Part shown: piece by piece, positions 37,203-52,909 of the stretch
Layout: every line of letters begins with the position of its first letter
Numbering within the stretch: the first letter of the stretch is position 1
DNA from: Rhodosorus marinus CCMP1338
Lineage: Eukaryota > Plantae > Rhodophyta
Direction of reading: 5' to 3'
Length of the DNA stretch: 64,000 nt
NCBI GenBank assembly: GCA_029953675.1
Contig: JAMWBK010000001.1
Coordinates: forward strand, 434,001 to 498,000
Translations under genes and position numbers: made by a program
Notes under the pieces: model-generated
What the model was told of the DNA's origin: nothing
Seen by the model: the letters and a program-made list of their open reading frames with translations, nothing else
Database searches by the model: none

Positions 37203-39094
<1,892 letters not shown>

Positions 39095-43693: not shown

Positions 43694-44623
43694 ATGGAAC
43701 CAGAACTGTCTGTCTTGAGGAAGAAGCAGATCGGGAAAAGTGATGTGGCGGATCAATTGCGAAAGTTTCTTCGTGGGAAAGATGGGTAAGGGACAGGCTG
43801 GGCGGATAATACTTGAGCTTGGATTGGCTGGGTCTGAGGTGTTTAGAGTCCTGGAAGGGATCCTCTTGCTGAATTGCAATAACCTTCCTCTCTGAAATAT
43901 TGAATAGAACCGAAAATGATACGGATCTCTCCCGAAATATTTCAAAGCTTTTGGCAGCCCTTGAAGGTGAGCTTCGTTTCCGCTGCCCCCAGCACTGCTC
44001 GGTTGAATTGATCACATTGTCTTCTTGTTCTCCCATAAATCAGCTGAGGACGACGAAACAACCCCAACAGCTGTATGCTCGGATGAGCTAGCATGGCAAG
44101 ATCCAAAAGTACCAGCAAATGAACAGAGCATCCGGGAAAGCGGCAACGTAGATCGAGAGAAGACTGATGATGATCTCGAGGATGACAATGAGGATCAGGC
44201 AGAAAAATCCTCGGGGAAGGGTCGAACGAAACCGAAGAAGAAAGGATCGAAACTGGAGAAATTGAAGGGCTCAGACAAAGAAGGTACTGGTACCAAAACT
44301 GCTCTTGAATCCAAACCTTCAGCCAAGCTGCAGGTAGACGGTGTCGAGAACGTAGCAAAAAGGGAGTCAAAGAAGAACACTCCTAGTAAGAAGAAGAAAC
44401 GCTCGGAGGGTGAGCCAGTCCACCCGCACTGTAGAGACAGAAGATGCTACTTACCGAGAAACTCGTCAAATTCACCGAAACAGATAGTATGAAGAAGAAA
44501 AAGAAGGAGAAACGTACACCGAAGAAGGACACGGACAAGGAAGCTAAGTTAAAGAGGAGAAAGTCTTCTTCATTGAAGGACGGAGATGATACGTCAAAGA
44601 AAACGAAGAGAAAATCGATGTAG
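43694..44623 (+). CDS. Hypothetical Lys/Glu-rich low-complexity protein, multi-exon
   Basis: Phase-consistent GT-AG exons MEPELSVLRKKQIGKSDVADQLRKFLRGKDG|TENDTDLSRNISKLLAALE|AEDDETTP...KKKKRSEG|...MKKKKKEKRTPKKDTDKEAKLKRRKS...KRKSM*; likely nuclear or nucleolar (inference). Confidence 0.65.
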
Positions 44624-45102: not shown

Positions 45103-45853
45103 TCATTCCGATTTTTTCTTCCTCTCGTAAGTGAAGGCTGTTGACCAAGGAACTCCACTGCGCGATAGGAAACAGTTGAGATTTTTGATGAGATCGGAAA
45201 GCCTACGGTTTTTCAGATGAAGCATCTTGTAAACGATCAAGACTGTACCTATCGCGAACTTTGGCCATAACTTGTGTAGGAGATATTGGAGAGGTGAAGG
45301 ACTCGCGCGGATACCCTTCACCGATAAAAACTGGGTTCCACGAGATTTAGCACACGATCAATTGGGAAGGTGGGACAAAAGAAAGAGCGTTAAAACTGAG
45401 AACAGATCTTGGATGTACAATTCACTTGCAAACTTCAATCAACCGCACCTTTCCGTCCATCGATAAAAGCGTAAGCCTTTTCGTACAGCGCACCAACGAA
45501 CTCGACCCTCTCCACCTTTCCATCAGCAAGCGCTTTGTAAAACTCCTTCAGAGACATACTCTCATCCTCAGCAAGAGCGGGTGCCTGAACGTCGGATCGC
45601 GGCGTACGGTTTTTGTTCCAAAAGCATGCATTCTTAGGATCCCATTCTTACACCTGTTCGAAACCTGGAAAAGCATCGTTCGTAATCTCACCTTGAAGAC
45701 CAAGAAGGGCGAAACCAGGACGAGTGATCGTATAAACTCCCTCCGACCAACGTTCGTTTCTGGAGGTTCAGACCTCATACAACATCCTCGGCAACTTGGT
45801 TTCCTCCCAGAGGCTGATCTGGATACCGCCAAGACAAACGATAAATTGTTCAT
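45103..45853 (-). CDS. Thylakoid-lumen-targeted small protein resembling a stand-alone FtsH lumenal (FtsH_ext) domain; 4 exons, 144 aa
   Basis: Exons 45853-45692, 45584-45449, 45330-45249 and 45157-45103 (435 nt, all introns GT-AG, phases consistent) give MNNLSFVLAVSRSASGRKPSCRGCCMRSEPPETNVGRREFIRSLVLVSPFLVFKAPALA-EDESMSLKEFYKALADGKVERVEFVGALYEKAYAFIDGRKVFIGEGYPRESFTSPISPTQVMAKVRDSGVPWSTAFTYERKKKSE*. Confidence 0.8.
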
Positions 45854-46289: not shown

Positions 46290-46754
46290 TTGGAGGAACC
46301 CGAAATCAAGAATATGACGAAACTTACACAAAAACGACGGGATGAAACGAAAGATCTGGAGAAACTTTTTATGTCGAAATATGGGGACGTCTTTGCGGAG
46401 GACATAAAGGACCTGCCACCTTGGCGCAATGTCAATTTTAATATCGATTTGAAACCGGGAGCCGAGCCAATTGCCCAAAGAACGTACCGTATGAGTCTTA
46501 CGGATCAACGAGAACTGAAAGCTCAACTGAACGACCTTTTAAGCAAGAACTTGGTACAACCGAGTTCGTCGCCTTTCGCCTCGCCATGCCTTTTCGTCGA
46601 CAAAAAAGATGGTGGTCGGCGATTGTGCATTGATTATCGAAAGCTGAACCAGGCTACAATCCTCAACAAAACAGCACCACCGAGAATTGACGATTGTTTG
46701 GATACACTCGGTAATGCCATGCTGTGTCATGACACGTGTTGCTTTTCAATTTGA
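46290..46754 (+). mobile_element. Ty3/Gypsy LTR-retrotransposon reverse transcriptase fragment (N-terminal part, truncated)
   Basis: [28 protein letters not shown]...[44 protein letters not shown]...[13 protein letters not shown]; the ORF stops before the YxDD motif; no LTR, gag, RNase H or integrase visible. Confidence 0.92.
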
Positions 46755-47498: not shown

Positions 47499-49984
47499 TC
47501 AGCGCTTCATCCTGTTTAGCTCCAGCCATTCGGTCGCCTGTTCCGGAACCCTTGCAATGACAAAAGTGGAAAAGCGTGAGGAAACGCCTACGTCGAAAAG
47601 GGAAGTCTTACTGCGTCTCAAACCTTCTCAGAATCTTCTCAGCCAATCGCCCAAGGTCGTTGTCTACACTCTTCATTGTCGCAAAGGTGAGGCATTTTCG
47701 GGAGGCTTGCTTGTTGCCGCTTCTCGGGGGTACATTCTCATCTCCAAGGAAAAAGGGCTAAACGAAACAAAAAAAATGTAGGAAGCGAACGTCAGCATCA
47801 CAGTGTGTTCCAAAACTCTTCAGGAATGCTGGGTGTGCCCGTACCATTTTGCCGAAGTCCTCGTTCCCAACACCTATGATCACAATACTTATCGGCAACG
47901 GACTGACAGTGTGCACGAGCTTTGACATGAAAGTCTCCCCATCACTTAGAACACCATCGCTTATGATGGTAAGCACCATGTACTGGACCCTCTGAACTCC
48001 GGATTCCATCATTCGACTCAATATGGTAGATGACGTGTCAAGAACCTAATAGAGCACGGGACAAACATCAGAAGATTCGATCTCCAACTTTGCAAAGAAT
48101 TCATCCCGCTGAACCAGTAGCTGCCGATGAAACGACCACTCACGTCTGAAAAGATCGTCGGACCATGCAGCTGAGCATTTGCCACTGACGACTTGTAGGC
48201 ATTGACCAAACCATCCACTCCCTGAACCATGTACCGCTCGGGGACACCGCTCAATGCAAAGCAGTGTGATAAATTATTGTGTGGGGGTATCTTCGCTCCG
48301 AACCCGTACGCCGGAATATAGTCCGTACTGCAAAGAGGGAGCGCAATGTTTCCAATAGTTCGCATCACCGCCTCGTACACGTTTGGTACGCCGGGCACAA
48401 GACTATGCAAGGAACCTTGACGACGGAAGAATTCGACAGGCAATGAGGTTGAAAAGCCCGTCAGAATGATTCAAGCGGAGATTTTCGAATAAGGGGATCG
48501 AATGATCACGCACCTCTTTGGTTTGGATCACCGTTCGATGCTGTGAAGTCCACAGCCATCATCAAATTGAGCTCAATTTCTCCTCGACAAAGACGATCCG
48601 TAAACGATGGTTCGTAGTTTTGAGTGATGGGCCCGAAGAGAAGCCTCCCACCCGGGCTCAGCGACAGCGGAGCTGTGTTATACACCGGTTGGATAAGATG
48701 CTGCATTGTAGAGAAAACACCGCCAATTGTGGTATCTCCCTTTTGTACGCAGAGATAGATCAACCTCTGATCGTTTCCACGATTCAATCGGGCTGAATTG
48801 ACCACGACTTCGAACTCCCCAGCACAGTTGAACCCGCTGCTTTCTAATTCGCCTTCCGCCTGTTCGCCGCTAGGAGGCAGTTGTTCTGAAGAAGGACGCA
48901 TTGGATCGGACATAAACACCTGCTCCGGAGGGCATACGAGATTGTGAGCGGCTCGAGACTCTACACATGGAAGCGTAAGTTCTTCGCTGCAATACCTCAG
49001 TGTAAAAGTCAAGATTGGTCAAGGCACCCGCACTTGCTGATGCAGCTTCTGTGCCCGGCTGAATCTCGTTCAAGTCCGGACTGCGGTAGATGTAGAGCCG
49101 CGGCTCAGTGCTGACAGGTTGCTCTGGCTCATTCGGGCGACTCCTTCTGTGGAAGAGGTTCTTCTTTGGTTTCCTGGAGGTTTTGATCCGCAGGATGCAG
49201 AGAAGCGACTTTTAGTCATTGAACTGGTTCAAGTCTAGGCAAATTTGGAGGAACAATGCTTGAAGTGTCGTACCCGTGAACCAGAGGATCTGAATCTTCT
49301 GGTGTAGGCTCATAGTCTTCATATCGTACCATCATGCGAACCATCCTCCGAGCCGGGTCCACACCAGTAGTCGTGGCAATCAGCACTGTGCCCGGTGACC
49401 GTGGTGATCGCACGTTTACAAGCTGTGCTTTAAACGGGCTTCCCGGTGGTGAAGCGATTACACTATTGTCCAAGAAGCAAAAATTAGGAATAGTCCAGAC
49501 ACGCAAGAAAAGGGGGAAATAAAGCGGCCCCCACAACTCACCTCGCCAAGCGGACGTCTGCAGAACCGATTAGGTTCTGAGGTGACGGCTCTTCCCCATC
49601 GACCCTGCTTTCGAATACGGCAACACGAAGCTCTTGATAGCACTGAAAAATATGATGCACAGCTACAGAACCAGAAAAGTCGGGGTTGGAGCTGGGTGGG
49701 TGAACTTCAGTCCTCCCCACTGCTTTCCAGTCGTGCACGCCGAAGCTTTTCAGATAGACGACAGCGGAAGTCCTCGGAGAATGCCCTTGAAGCCCAATCA
49801 AATCTCGACACAGTATTGTAAGCAGGACTTTCGATCCCTCTTCCTCCTCTTCTGCGGGCTGCCCCAACCCCACTCGATCAGCCTCTAACGGTCGCGACTC
49901 AGCGGCCACGACTCCCTGGGGCGGATTTCCGTACCCGCTATACCCCGGCGCACCACCACCTCCATTAAAAAATCCCGCGTTCAT
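47499..49984 (-). CDS. Copine-family protein (C2 domains plus vWA), divergent, multi-exon
   Basis: C2A VGRTEVHPPSSNPDF...IFQCYQELRVAVF; vWA LNLMMAVDFTASNGDPN..SLH, IPAYGFGAKIPP, LHGPTIFS, YMVLTIISDGVLSD, PLPISIVIIGVGNEDF; last exon VPEQATEWLELNRMKR*. Confidence 0.9.
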
Positions 49985-50226
49985 CAAAAATCCCGCTCAC
50001 AAAACACAAAACCAAACCTTTCCCCCCCCAACCCAAAAACCAAAACCAAATTGCAAACACACTACGCTAGCTCCTACAACGAACAAAAACCTCCAAACCT
50101 CCAAACCAGAACAGAAACAAAACACACTCACAAACACATATATATACACGAATAGATCTCAAAAGCCTCTACTTCAATACCCTCCACGTCTCAAAACAGT
50201 CTAATAGCTTTATCATCCTCCCTGCA

Positions 50227-50253: not shown

Positions 50254-51750
50254 AACCTACCAAAATCCATTACCTCATCGCCTTTTTCACCTTCAAAAGG
50301 GAACAAAATAATTAATTTCTATACAAACACAATGAATTGTGTTCAAAGGGGAAAACATTACTTAAATTCCATTACCAAATACAATGAATTTATCACAATC
50401 CAACAAATACGTATTATATATCTATAAATATTCATTATTCATTATTTGAGCTGACACCCTTCAATTTTTACTGAACAGTTCAGATTTGCTCTTAAGCCCC
50501 TTCCTCCTACATTACCCCCCCTTCTAGTTTTGTAGGTTGAATTCGGCTAACCCGTCTAACGTTTATCTCTCCTAGGACATGATTGCTCTAATTTATACTG
50601 AAATTTACTCTGTGTTTGTTGGGGTTTAACCCCCCCCCCCCCTTTTTAATTGTGAATACAGGCGGTGTTGGGTGTAAATTCAGAAACGGTTCTACCCCTA
50701 TGGATTGGTGGTGGGGAATTTTGATGGAATGTAGTCATTGTGTGGAGGCGGTGGGTTGGGGAAGGTCGTTTTCCATGGTTGGTGGGGTTTGCTGGAGTAA
50801 GTGCTCATCCTGTTGAGTCGGGATGGTCCTTGTGTTCAGATGTGCAGTTCTTGGAACGGTTGAGAGTTCTGAGAGGATCTTGATACTGTTTCCGCGCATT
50901 CTTGACTGGGAAAGTTGGGGACCATCTTGGAAATCTCAGGCCGCTTTCTCGGCTCTGGCGGGTTCTTTGCTTCTTCGTGGCTATAAGCAACCGTGACTTG
51001 GTCGGTGAGAATAGATGTGCTCGAGCTATCGCGCGGTTTGTGGGATTATCCGCTTGGCACATTTTTGCGGACGAGCAACAATGGTCAACGATAAGTTTTG
51101 TGCCAATCGTCGCGCCCTTGTTCGAACGAGACGAACAAAGGAATAGGATGACGATTCCCAGGAGATTCCGCCACATCTTCTAGGAAACGCAGCATGTGGG
51201 TTGGGAACAAGTAAATGGGTACGGGATCTCGCACACACACACTACAAGAGCAGCTCAAGAGTATCCCTCGTGCAACCGCTCCTCCTTGGACCGCTCTGCT
51301 ACCCGTTTGAGGAATGATTCCCAACCGACGTACGCCTTGCATCGCTCTAAACAACGCTTCCCATCCCGAGCGCGGTCAAGAACATCTTGGCAATACAAAG
51401 AACACCCAAGGCCGGGCACTTTGGAAAAATCTCCTTGGGAAGTATATAAACGTCCAAATCAGAAACCTTAGGATCCTGTTCTATATTTTTTCCTTGCTCC
51501 AGAAGAAAGCATTCATGTCCTGGAAAATTCCGGCTGTCTTCGACGACCCCAGTCCTTCCCACCTGCCAACTCGATTCGTCCCAAAATGACGACGGTCGGT
51601 GCCTACCATCGAAATAGGTTCTCAAAAAGAATCGCATTCCTCAGTGTGAGGGAACGACTTGAGGAGTCGGCCATGTAGCTAAGGGCTTTGTTTTTCGACT
51701 GGTTTCTGCTCTAGAGAACTGCTTGGAATCTTGGTGAACATGCTGAATAG

Positions 51751-52909
51751 ATGGAACCCGAATCGAGGAAGGATGATGATGACAATCTACTTGGATGGGG
51801 GTTAGACCTAGAGGTCTCCGGGACGCGGGAGAAGCGGGTTGGAGAGTGGAAGAAGCCAGCTCCATCGTCAAATTCAGGAGGCCGTAGGACGAGGATTTCG
51901 AAGAAACAGTTCGGAAGCGGAGAGGATGGAGCCTGGGACAAGTTCTACGCTCAGAAAGGAATCAAGTTCTTCAAGGACAGGCACAATTTGAGAAAGTTCT
52001 TCCCGGAACTTTTGCCTGAGTACCAGCGGGATAATCCAGAGGAACATCATCCGAAGCTCAAACCTGATCCCGACGCATATGAAAATGGCTTAGATACGCC
52101 TCCTGCTGATGAGGTCCTGGCCGATAAGCTCCTCGTTGTGGAGGCCGGTTGCGGGGTGAGCACTGTTCCCGAAAAACCCTGGATTTTGGGCCCTTATCTT
52201 CTGGTGATGCTGAGCATGGAGCAGCTACTCCTTTCCCTCAAAATTTCGCTCTTCAGGTAGGAAACGCGTGCTTTCCACTACTGAGAGCAAACCCGGAGAT
52301 GTTCATGTTCAGTTTCGATTTCTCCAAAGTCGCCGTCGACTTCCTGCGTTCCAACGCAGAGTATGATCCAACTCGAGTCTTTGCGTTTGTGGGAGACCTT
52401 ACCAAGGAATCTGATATCACCAGTATTGTTGGTAGAGGAAAAGCTTCTTTCGTAACGATGATATGGGTGCTCTCTGCGCTCACTCCCGAGTCAATGCCAG
52501 CCGCTGTTCTGGAGGCCAATGCACTTTTGAAGAAAGGAGGTAGTGTTCTGCTGCGCGATTACGCTGTTGGTGATCTTGCGCAGATTCGCAAGTGCGGATA
52601 TACGACTCCTGTAAGCTGGCGAACCTCCACATGTCCTCGCTTAAAATGATGTAGCATCTCATGCGATGAGCTTTTTTTGCTTCTCTTGTTTGTTGCCCTT
52701 TTCAACAGGTTGCGCCAGGTTTACTGAGACGGGGAGACGGCACCATTGCGTACTTCTTCGATATCGATGGACTGAAACACCTTTTTGAGTCCAACGGGTT
52801 CAAGACGGAGTACATACACTACGTCGATCGTCAACTGGAAAACCGAAAGAGAGAGATCCAAATGTACAGACGCTGGATCCAGGCAAAGTTTGAAAAAATT
52901 GTGGAATAA
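51751..52909 (+). CDS. METTL6: tRNA m3C methyltransferase, METTL6/METTL2 (Trm140)-like, 3 exons
   Basis: AWDKFYAQKGIKFFKDRHNLRKFFPEL, VEAGCG|VGNACFPLL, SFDFSKVAV, FVGDLT, MIWVLSAL, GGSVLLRDYAVGDLAQIR, RGDGTIAYFF, NRKREIQMYRRWIQAKF; METTL6 versus METTL2 not resolved. Confidence 0.88.

What the first reader, a model, noticed from the sequence alone, without database searches (positions are those of the whole stretch)
45103..45853. Hidden 4-exon gene: stand-alone FtsH lumenal domain apparently exported to the thylakoid lumen by Tat
Seen: four phase-consistent exons that the ORF track does not join give 144 aa, comprising a plastid-transit-like N-terminus (M..SFV, S/R-rich), a twin-arginine motif (GRREF), a hydrophobic stretch and an AxA-type cleavage site (ALA|EDE). 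The ~85-aa mature part MSLKEFYKALADGKVERVEF...FIDGRK...VMAKVRDSGVPW remains after cleavage. Established: thylakoid FtsH proteases carry a lumenal domain of the form YSEFLxAVxxGKVERVxF..A.DG...L...GV (FtsH_ext, PF06480), normally followed by a TM helix plus AAA+ and M41 domains. Inference: here the domain is free, has no second TM helix, ATPase or protease, and ends in a stop. It could be a soluble lumenal modulator or decoy of FtsH oligomerisation or PSII repair. The GEGYP segment may be a family-specific motif.
Basis: partly seen in the sequence, partly recalled or inferred. Interest (0 to 1): 0.7.

Follow-up and report, generated by a model that had tools for sequence, protein, structure and literature searches.

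The report
Free FtsH lumenal domain, red alga
A real, expressed four-exon gene of the red alga Rhodosorus marinus encodes a small protein that is only the thylakoid-lumen domain of the FtsH protease behind a plastid and twin-arginine targeting leader. It belongs to an uncharacterised family found in red algae and algae with red-derived plastids.

Summary
On the minus strand, four exons (45853-45692, 45584-45449, 45330-45249, 45157-45103) joined by three GT..AG introns give 144 aa. A transcript-derived protein from another Rhodosorus marinus strain aligns 144/144 without gaps at 90% identity, so all three junctions are used. The GenBank model for this locus (KAJ8908442.1, 81 aa) starts at an internal Met and lacks exon 1, which holds the whole targeting leader.

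The mature ~85-aa part is related to the FtsH lumenal/periplasmic domain:
- Pfam FtsH_ext is sub-threshold for this protein (E 0.025), but 19 of 43 relatives hit it (best 2.2e-5).
- hhalign against cyanobacterial FtsH2 lumenal domains gives 93% probability, E 2.7e-7; controls stay at or below 3.4%.
- The AlphaFold model (pLDDT 86) finds FtsH N-domains as its top Foldseek hits.

No relative has a following membrane helix, ATPase or protease. The family occurs in red algae, ochrophytes and Vitrella. It shares an RR leader and a family-specific loop, GEG[YWF]PxE...SP.

Lumen location, Tat transport and any action on FtsH or PSII repair are inferred, not shown. I found no paper on the family. I rate it a new variant of a known kind, of moderate interest.

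The parts
45692..45853 (-). Exon 1 (aa 1-54). It holds the start ATG (45853-45851), a transit-peptide-like N-terminus (MNNLSFV..., S/T 7, R/K 5, D/E 2 in the first 34 aa), the twin arginine R37-R38 (45745-45740), the hydrophobic h-region SLVLVSPFLVF and K54. It is missing from the GenBank model.
   Evidence: the RR column is conserved in family alignment A1
45585..45691 (-). Intron 1, 107 nt, GT..AG, phase 0. It lies just before the codons of the APALA|EDE cleavage region.
   Evidence: the junction VFK|APALA is present in transcript-derived P0003 and P0001
45449..45584 (-). Exon 2 (aa 55-99 plus the first base of V100). It holds the signal c-region APALA, the predicted cleavage after A59 (mature protein starts at E60, 45569), and helix 1 with strands 2-3 of the FtsH-type domain (SLKEFYKALADGKVERVEFVGALYEKAYAFIDGRK). 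The GenBank model starts here at Met63 (45557).
45331..45448 (-). Intron 2, 118 nt, GT..AG, phase 1. It is retained in a second transcript of the related strain, which gives a 103-aa truncated product ending GRKGAID*. In the window the read-through would end GRKGAVD*.
45249..45330 (-). Exon 3 (aa 100-126 plus two bases of S127). It holds strand 4, the family-specific loop GEGYPRE (45322-45302) ...SP, and the start of helix 2 (TQVMAKVRD).
45158..45248 (-). Intron 3, 91 nt, GT..AG, phase 2.
   Evidence: the junction VRD|SGVPW is present in P0003 and P0002
45103..45157 (-). Exon 4 (aa 127-144). It holds the conserved GVPW last strand, a short basic tail YERKKKSE and the stop TGA (45105-45103). 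No second membrane helix follows.

Best explanation
This is a functional nuclear gene of the red alga Rhodosorus marinus. Its 144-aa precursor has a plastid transit peptide (about aa 1-34), a cleavable twin-arginine thylakoid-transfer signal (GRREFIRS, h-region, K, ALA|E) and, as the whole mature protein (about 85 aa), a single domain related to the lumenal/periplasmic N-domain of FtsH.

Shown:
- the gene structure and its expression in a sister strain;
- homology and shared fold with the FtsH N-domain;
- absence of TM2, the AAA+ ATPase and the M41 protease;
- membership of a conserved family in red algae and red-plastid algae, defined by the loop GEG[YWF]PxE...S..SP and the terminal GVP[YFW].

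Inferred:
- The precursor is imported into the stroma, the small domain folds there, and cpTat carries it into the thylakoid lumen, where the signal is removed.
- The leader layout (transit peptide, RR signal, lumenal domain) is the one described for Tat-inserted type-B thylakoid FtsH. The family therefore probably arose from the 5' part of such an FtsH gene.
- In the lumen it acts as a soluble protein-protein interaction module. The most likely target is the lumenal N-domain ring of thylakoid FtsH, affecting its assembly or stability. A second possibility is a new partner bound through the family-specific loop.

This last functional step is the weakest.
For: Gene and expression: (144/144 aa, 90% identity, no gaps against the transcript-derived P0003).

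Origin and annotation: (GCA_029953675.1, contig JAMWBK010000001.1; the 81-aa model lacks exon 1).

Domain identity:
- Pfam FtsH_ext gives E 0.025 for this protein. 19 of 43 relatives match at E <= 1, best 2.2e-5.
- hhalign of family profile A2 against 93 cyanobacterial FtsH2 lumenal domains gives probability 93.3%, E 2.7e-7, over 65 aligned columns that span the whole domain.
- Controls: the reversed alignment gives 0.1%, and 30 column shuffles reach at most 3.4%.
- AlphaFold2 gives pLDDT 85.9 and pTM 0.73 with the order b-a-b-b-b-loop-a-b.
- The top Foldseek PDB hits are FtsH N-domains: 2muy (E 1.7e-4), 4m8a and 4v0b (TM 0.66 by query, 0.80 by target). The N-domains of the FtsHi/Fhl subunits of the Ycf2 motor follow (8xkv, 8xku, 8xqw).

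Stand-alone architecture:
- All credible hits of an exhaustive HMMER scan of 1.84 billion representatives are 73-260 aa; none is a full FtsH.
- 0 of 37 relatives have a TM-like segment after the domain (maximum KD19 0.87, against 2.38 for FtsH2 TM2).
- No Walker A, SRH or HExGH motif occurs in any frame of the window.

Targeting:
- The RR column is the alignment consensus. RR plus a hydrophobic stretch occurs in about 22-24 of 29 members that have at least 55 aa upstream.
- Brown-alga and other heterokont homologues add an ER signal peptide with F at +1 (GS|FAP, TS|FVA, LA|FRP), the known heterokont plastid-import motif (sequences; motif from my own knowledge).
- The Rhodosorus paralogue P0029 gives weak hits to Pfam TAT_signal and to the Rieske TAT signal.

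Precedent: type-B thylakoid FtsH is inserted by Tat, and the mature form may keep only one TM helix (review PMC9020784).
Against: - The window protein itself is below Pfam's gathering score for FtsH_ext (15.2 against 25.5 bits).
- The family profile finds no canonical FtsH chain in PDB sequences. Its best hits there are not significant: ApcE (whole-sequence E 0.0043, every matched stretch non-significant) and Fhl3 (8xks/8xqw, E about 0.07).
- The word-indexed profile search also found no FtsH.
- Sequence identity to the FtsH N-domain structures is only 7-19% in the Foldseek alignments. The fold is small, and ribosomal eL38/L7Ae-like proteins appear lower in the list.
- No Tat-signal HMM (Pfam PF10518, NCBIfam) matches the window protein.
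- A few relatives lack RR (P0007, P0020, P0027, P0036).
- There is no localisation, processing or interaction data for any member. No paper on the family was found.
- The most conserved residues lie in a loop that FtsH lacks. This argues for a function that has diverged from FtsH-FtsH contacts.
Confidence: 0.6

Rival explanations
1. The hydrophobic stretch is not cleaved and acts as a signal anchor. The protein is then a membrane-tethered FtsH-type domain facing the lumen, a 'headless FtsH' with TM1 only, rather than a soluble lumenal protein.
For: FtsH itself carries this domain directly after a membrane helix. The best 19-residue hydrophobicity window of the window protein is 1.64, which is borderline for a membrane segment.
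Against: - The hydrophobic core is only about 11-13 residues (SLVLVSPFLVF) and contains a proline.
- It is followed by K and an A-L-A|E site typical of thylakoidal processing peptidase substrates.
- Relatives show the same short h-region plus an AxA-like site.
- In plant type-B FtsH the equivalent segment is thought to be removed (PMC9020784).
Confidence: 0.12
2. The resemblance to FtsH_ext is convergence on a small alpha/beta fold. The family would be an unrelated lumenal domain whose function lies entirely in the GEGxPxE...SP loop, for example binding a ligand, a metal or a photosystem subunit.
For: - Identity to the FtsH N-domain structures is 7-19% in the Foldseek alignments.
- The window protein is below Pfam's cut-off.
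- The near-invariant residues (G103, G105, P107, E109, S116, P117) lie in a loop absent from FtsH.
- Other small folds (eL38, L7Ae) appear among the weaker Foldseek hits.
Against: - Three independent tests point to the same domain over its full length: per-member Pfam hits in 19 of 43 relatives, hhalign at 93% with clean controls, and the top-ranked Foldseek hits.
- The precursor layout also matches Tat-inserted FtsH.
- P0026 carries a second, more FtsH-like copy of the domain without the loop.
Confidence: 0.1
3. The protein works in another compartment (stroma, mitochondrion, or secreted). The RR motif would then be incidental.
For: Targeting is predicted from motifs only. No dedicated predictor such as TargetP or SignalP was available, and the Tat-signal HMMs do not match the window protein.
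Against: - RR plus an h-region is conserved across phyla, whereas the rest of the leader is not.
- Heterokont members add an ER signal peptide with the plastid-specific F at +1.
- All named members come from photosynthetic red-lineage taxa.
- The first 34 residues are S/T- and R/K-rich with an early Phe, as in red-algal transit peptides (the transit-peptide feature is from my own knowledge).
Confidence: 0.08
4. It is a decaying remnant of a truncated FtsH gene with no function of its own.
For: It lies next to a degraded retrotransposon fragment at 46290-46754, and GenBank calls it a hypothetical protein.
Against: - It is expressed and correctly spliced in a sister strain.
- Between the two strains the mature domain changes less than the leader.
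- Relatives with the same architecture and near-invariant motifs occur in red algae, ochrophytes and a chromerid.
- There is a second paralogue in Rhodosorus itself (P0029/P0049).
Confidence: 0.02

Closest known systems
FtsH_ext (Pfam PF06480): the periplasmic/lumenal N-domain of FtsH proteases. Solved examples are E. coli 4V0B and 2MUY and Thermotoga 4M8A. Cyanobacterial FtsH2 is the thylakoid form.
   Same: - The fold and secondary-structure order match (b-a-b-b-b-a-b).
- The profile-profile match spans the whole domain.
- The opening motif is shared: (Y/F)xxFLxxLxxGxVxxVxF.
- The predicted location is on the lumenal side of the thylakoid.
   Different: - Here it is the entire mature protein: no TM2, no AAA+ ATPase and no M41 protease.
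- The loop between strand 4 and helix 2 is about 7 residues longer and carries the near-invariant GEG[YWF]PxE...S..SP.
- Pfam's gathering score is not reached by the window protein.
Type-B thylakoid FtsH precursors of plants (FtsH2/FtsH8), which are inserted by the Tat pathway (Rodrigues et al. 2011, as summarised in PMC9020784)
   Same: The N-terminal layout of the precursor is the same: stromal transit peptide, twin-arginine signal, then the lumenal FtsH domain.
   Different: The plant proteins continue into a membrane helix, the ATPase and the protease, and they stay in the membrane. This protein stops after the lumenal domain.
N-domains of the FtsHi/Fhl pseudo-proteases in the Ycf2-FtsHi import motor (8XKV, 8XKU, 8XQW, 8XKS)
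   Same: They are structural neighbours (Foldseek E 1.7e-3 to 1e-2). They are also an example of the FtsH N-domain kept in proteins that have lost protease activity.
   Different: Those are large inner-envelope AAA+ proteins of the green lineage whose N-domains face the intermembrane space. They are not small soluble proteins with a Tat leader.
Small Tat-exported thylakoid-lumen proteins such as PsbP, PsbQ and their relatives
   Same: They share a bipartite leader (transit peptide plus RR signal with an AxA site), small soluble mature proteins, and auxiliary roles at the lumenal face of photosynthetic complexes.
   Different: The folds are unrelated. No association of this family with any photosystem structure was found in PDB sequences.

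Membership tests
FtsH_ext domain (PF06480) | Score at or above Pfam's gathering cut-off (25.5 bits) | tested here: not met
   The window protein scores 15.2 bits, E 0.025, residues 60-118 against profile positions 25-76 of 103. Among 43 family members, 19 match at E <= 1, best 2.2e-5.
FtsH_ext domain (PF06480) | Profile-level homology to bona fide FtsH lumenal or periplasmic domains | tested here: met
   hhalign of the family profile against 93 cyanobacterial FtsH2 lumenal domains gives probability 93.3%, E 2.7e-7, over 65 columns. The reversed alignment gives 0.1% and shuffled controls reach at most 3.4%.
FtsH_ext domain (PF06480) | The alpha+beta fold of the FtsH N-domain | tested here: met
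   The AlphaFold2 model has pLDDT 85.9. Foldseek's top hits are 2muy, 4m8a and 4v0b, with TM 0.63-0.66 normalised by the query and up to 0.80 by the target.
FtsH protease (AAA+ / peptidase M41) | AAA+ ATPase module (Walker A/B, SRH) after the N-domain | tested here: not met
   The product stops 13 residues after the domain. No Walker A, Walker B or SRH motif occurs in any frame of the window.
FtsH protease (AAA+ / peptidase M41) | M41 zinc-protease domain (HExxH) | tested here: not met
   No HE[AS]GH motif occurs in the window. No family member exceeds 261 aa.
FtsH protease (AAA+ / peptidase M41) | Second transmembrane helix directly after the N-domain | tested here: not met
   0 of 37 members have a hydrophobic 19-residue window above 0.87 after the domain. 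The FtsH2 control scores 2.38.
Thylakoid Tat (twin-arginine) substrate | Twin arginine in an (S/T)RRxFLK-like n-region | tested here: met
   The window has G-R-R-E-F-I-R at residues 36-42. RR is the consensus of the aligned column and occurs in about 22-24 of 29 complete members.
Thylakoid Tat (twin-arginine) substrate | Moderately hydrophobic h-region, a basic residue in the c-region, and an AxA processing site | tested here: met
   The window has SLVLVSPFLVF (10-residue KD 2.4-2.7), then K54, then A-L-A|E.
Thylakoid Tat (twin-arginine) substrate | Match to curated Tat-signal profiles (PF10518, TIGR01409) | tested here: not met
   The window protein gives no match. Only the paralogue P0029 gives weak hits: E 0.097 to TAT_signal and 0.028 to the Rieske TAT signal. 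These short profiles are trained mainly on bacterial signals.
Thylakoid Tat (twin-arginine) substrate | Transport that depends on the pH gradient and TatC and is abolished by RR-to-KK | not testable with these tools
   This needs import assays with isolated plastids or thylakoids.
Red-algal plastid transit peptide | N-terminal Phe within the first residues; hydroxylated and basic composition with few acidic residues | tested here: met
   The N-terminus is MNNLSFV. The first 34 aa have S+T 7, R+K 5 and D+E 2. The criterion itself is from my own knowledge, and no predictor was run.

The most novel reading that the evidence does not exclude
The family is a red-lineage-specific soluble lumenal partner of the thylakoid FtsH complex. 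It would have arisen from the truncated 5' end of a Tat-inserted FtsH gene. It would dock on, or compete with, the lumenal N-domain ring and so tune FtsH assembly and D1/PSII turnover from the lumenal side, a side for which no FtsH regulator is known.
Probability: 0.2. Interest if true: 0.75.

Novelty: new variant of a known kind. Interest (0 to 1): 0.5.

Why it matters
The role of the lumenal domain of thylakoid FtsH, the protease at the centre of photosystem II repair, is poorly understood. A conserved, free, soluble copy of that domain, probably sent to the lumen, offers a natural way to study it. The protein can be expressed alone, tested for ring formation and for binding to FtsH or PSII, and knocked out in transformable relatives.

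There are two further points:
- It adds a candidate member to the poorly known lumen proteome of red algae and red-plastid algae.
- The public annotation of this gene drops the exon that carries all of the targeting information.

Tried and rejected
- A single-sequence search of PDB sequences gave only a TetR regulator at E 0.46, which I treat as chance.
- NCBIfam gave only an acylphosphatase model at E 0.12 over 23 residues, also chance.
- The family profile against PDB sequences gave ApcE phycobilisome core-membrane linkers (whole-sequence E 0.004). Every matched stretch was non-significant on its own (i-E above 100) and covered only the first ~30 residues, the motif (G)EIS(V)xEFxxxL. I rejected it as a shared helix-strand motif; in addition, linkers lie on the stromal side.
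- The word-indexed profile search of 5.8 billion proteins returned only more short family members and no FtsH, so it neither helped nor hurt the homology claim.
- Pfam on the Porphyridium orthologue P0004 gave nothing at E <= 0.1.
- I searched all six frames of the window for AAA+/M41 motifs, to test the idea that this is the first exon set of an ordinary FtsH. None was found.
- Four literature searches (lumenal domain of FtsH; FtsH_ext/PF06480; 'FtsH extracellular'; lumen/Tat/diatom) found no description of a stand-alone form.
- I did not use the second structure job. The tool folds single chains, so a complex with FtsH could not be modelled.

Full report
**What is in the sequence.** On the minus strand of 45103-45853 there are four exons: 45853-45692, 45584-45449, 45330-45249 and 45157-45103. 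Three introns of 107, 118 and 91 nt join them, all GT..AG, in phases 0, 1 and 2. Together they give a 435-nt reading frame and a 144-aa product ending in TGA. The start ATG at 45853 is the first after an in-frame TAG five codons upstream (read).

**Is the gene real?** Yes.
- A search of 5.8 billion proteins found one cluster. Its members include a 144-aa MMETSP transcriptome protein of Rhodosorus marinus (P0003). It aligns with the window product over 144/144 residues, 90% identical, with no gap, across all three predicted junctions.
- A second transcript of that strain (P0001, 103 aa) retains intron 2 and ends GRKGAID*. The matching read-through in the window ends GRKGAVD*.
- The third cluster member is GenBank KAJ8908442.1, 'hypothetical protein NDN08_005151 [Rhodosorus marinus]', 81 aa. 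It is 100% identical to exons 2-4 of the window starting from internal Met63.
- The window is therefore nuclear DNA of this red alga (assembly GCA_029953675.1, contig JAMWBK010000001.1). The public model lacks exon 1, which holds the whole targeting leader. The gene is half-hidden rather than hidden.

**Is it a stand-alone protein?** Yes.
- The transcript-derived product stops at the same place as the window product.
- No Walker A, Walker B, SRH or HExGH motif occurs in any of the six frames of the 64-kb window.
- The next annotated gene downstream is a lysine-rich protein on the other strand. The other neighbours are a copine, a methyltransferase and S-adenosylhomocysteine hydrolase.

**The family.**
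- An exhaustive HMMER scan of 1.84 billion representative proteins with the 85-aa mature part gave 43 hits at E <= 1e-3. Apart from one spurious repeat protein (P0039), all are 73-260 aa, with the domain at or near the C-terminus. None is a full-length FtsH. A profile search added 20-odd more short members.
- Named sources are Porphyridium purpureum and a second Rhodosorus paralogue (red algae); Ectocarpus, Choristocarpus, Fibrocapsa, Chattonella, Octactis, Tribonema and Chrysoparadoxa (ochrophytes); and Vitrella (a chromerid). No green-lineage or cyanobacterial member was identified among the named ones.
- One Octactis entry is auto-named 'Peptidase M41 FtsH extracellular domain-containing protein' in UniRef. 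The domain has thus been flagged automatically in at least one relative.
- The alignment gives the signature xxEFxxxLxxGxVxxVxFxGxxGDxAxAxxxDGxxxRIGEGxPxExxxSxxSPxxVVxxLRxxGVPY. G105 is invariant. F69, F83, G103, P107, E109, S116, P117 and P130 are conserved in at least 90% of sequences.

**Is the domain related to FtsH_ext?** Three independent tests agree.
1. Pfam. The window protein matches PF06480 only weakly (E 0.025, 15.2 bits, below the 25.5-bit cut-off). However, 19 of 43 family members match it at E <= 1, best 2.2e-5, and no other family recurs.
2. Profile-profile comparison. I collected 120 cyanobacterial FtsH2-type N-terminal fragments and trimmed them to the lumenal domain, leaving 93 sequences below 90% identity. 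hhalign against the family alignment gave probability 93.3% and E 2.7e-7 over 65 aligned columns covering the whole domain. The reversed FtsH alignment gave 0.1%. Thirty column-shuffled versions gave at most 3.4% and E no lower than 0.013.
3. Structure. AlphaFold2 on the family alignment gave pLDDT 85.9 and pTM 0.73 with the order strand-helix-strand-strand-strand-loop-helix-strand. Foldseek against the PDB ranked the FtsH periplasmic N-domains first: 2MUY (E 1.7e-4), 4M8A and 4V0B (TM 0.66 by query, 0.80 by target). The N-domains of the FtsHi/Fhl subunits of the Ycf2 import motor came next. Ribosomal eL38/L7Ae-like folds appear only lower in the list.

The weak points are these. Identity to the FtsH N-domain structures is only 7-19% in the Foldseek alignments. 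The family profile finds no canonical FtsH in PDB sequences; its best hits there are not significant (ApcE at whole-sequence E 0.0043 with no significant stretch, Fhl3 at about 0.07). The most conserved family residues lie in a loop about 7 residues longer than in FtsH.

**No second membrane helix.** After the terminal GVPY strand, 0 of 37 members have a hydrophobic 19-residue window above 0.87. The segment after the FtsH2 lumenal domain (TM2) scores 2.38. Family tails are short and basic; in the window the tail is YERKKKSE.

**Targeting (inferred from motifs).**
- The first 34 residues are S/T-rich (7) and basic (5 R/K against 2 D/E), with Phe at position 6. This fits red-algal transit peptides (my own knowledge).
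- Next come G-R-R-E-F-I-R, close to the Tat consensus (S/T)RRxFLK; an 11-13-residue hydrophobic stretch containing a proline; Lys54 in the c-region; and A-L-A|E.
- RR is the consensus of its alignment column. RR followed by a hydrophobic stretch occurs in about 22-24 of 29 members that have at least 55 residues before the domain. P0007, P0020, P0027 and P0036 lack it.
- Heterokont members place an ER signal peptide with Phe at +1 (GS|FAP, TS|FVA, LA|FRP) in front of this leader. That is the heterokont plastid-import signature (sequences; motif from my own knowledge).
- Curated Tat-signal HMMs do not match the window protein. They match the Rhodosorus paralogue P0029 only weakly. No dedicated predictor was available.

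**How it most likely works.** The precursor is imported into the stroma, the small domain folds there, and cpTat carries it into the lumen, where the signal is cut after A59. This releases an 85-aa, 9.7-kDa, near-neutral protein. The leader layout is the one reported for type-B thylakoid FtsH of plants. Those proteins are inserted by Tat, and their first hydrophobic segment may be removed (review PMC9020784, citing Rodrigues et al. 2011). The simplest origin is therefore the 5' part of such an FtsH gene that lost TM2, the ATPase and the protease.

In the lumen the protein is most plausibly a protein-protein interaction module. Isolated FtsH N-domains can form hexameric rings (title of 4V0B). 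A free paralogue could therefore self-assemble or dock on the lumenal ring of thylakoid FtsH. Alternatively, the near-invariant GEGxPxE...SP loop, which FtsH lacks, may bind a new partner. My probabilities are:
- real gene: about 0.97
- FtsH-type domain: about 0.85
- thylakoid lumen: about 0.7
- Tat route: about 0.6
- direct action on FtsH: about 0.2-0.25

**Comparison with the known, and novelty.** This is not an FtsH protease: the ATPase, the protease and TM2 were all tested and are absent. It is a divergent member of the FtsH_ext domain superfamily at profile and structure level, although the window protein is below Pfam's own threshold. Four literature searches found no description of a stand-alone form. 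Database entries are 'hypothetical' or auto-named. I rate it a new variant of a known kind, of moderate interest. It gives an experimental handle on the poorly understood lumenal domain of the PSII-repair protease. It also shows a public annotation that lost the targeting exon.

Noticed in passing
window 46290-46754 (+): An ORF with a reverse-transcriptase-like start (…[26 protein letters not shown]…) breaks off after about 150 aa and does not continue in any frame. It looks like a degraded fragment of an LTR-retrotransposon pol gene, about 440 bp upstream of the gene's start. Pfam gave no hit at E <= 0.1, so the identification rests on my reading of the motif.
   Followed up: partly
window 45331-45448 (-), intron 2: The related strain's transcriptome holds both the spliced form (144 aa) and an intron-2-retaining form that truncates the domain after strand 3 (103 aa, …GRKGAID*). 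It could be unspliced precursor or regulated intron retention.
   Followed up: partly
P0029 / P0049 (Rhodosorus marinus, 181 aa; not in the window): Rhodosorus has a second, divergent paralogue of the family. It has its own RR leader (SFSRRSFLSIAIGG…AMA|EG), a glycine-rich spacer and a Cys-containing C-terminal tail.
   Followed up: partly
P0026 (258 aa, environmental; not in the window): One relative carries two copies of the domain. The second copy (…YESVKVAINSNQVEGVVFNPGAETAFAVIGDE…) lacks the GEGxPxE loop and looks more like canonical FtsH_ext. Many members of that subfamily also have a conserved C-x-GFGC-N motif before the domain.
   Followed up: no
window 44025-44623 (+): The gene downstream, on the opposite strand, encodes a very lysine- and acid-rich low-complexity protein (GenBank model 218 aa, no Pfam domain).
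   Followed up: no
window ~37500-38900 (+), ~47900-50000 (-), ~51750-52650 (+): Split ORFs correspond to intron-containing genes for S-adenosylhomocysteine hydrolase, a copine and a class-I methyltransferase. A DDE_3 transposase gene lies further on in the contig.
   Followed up: no
family profile A2 against PDB: The opening motif of the domain (GxISxxEFxxxLxxxxVxRxxFYxP) resembles a repeated motif in the REP/linker domains of the phycobilisome core-membrane linker ApcE (8imi, 7vea, 7eyd). Each stretch is non-significant on its own, so this is probably a chance helix-strand similarity.
   Followed up: partly
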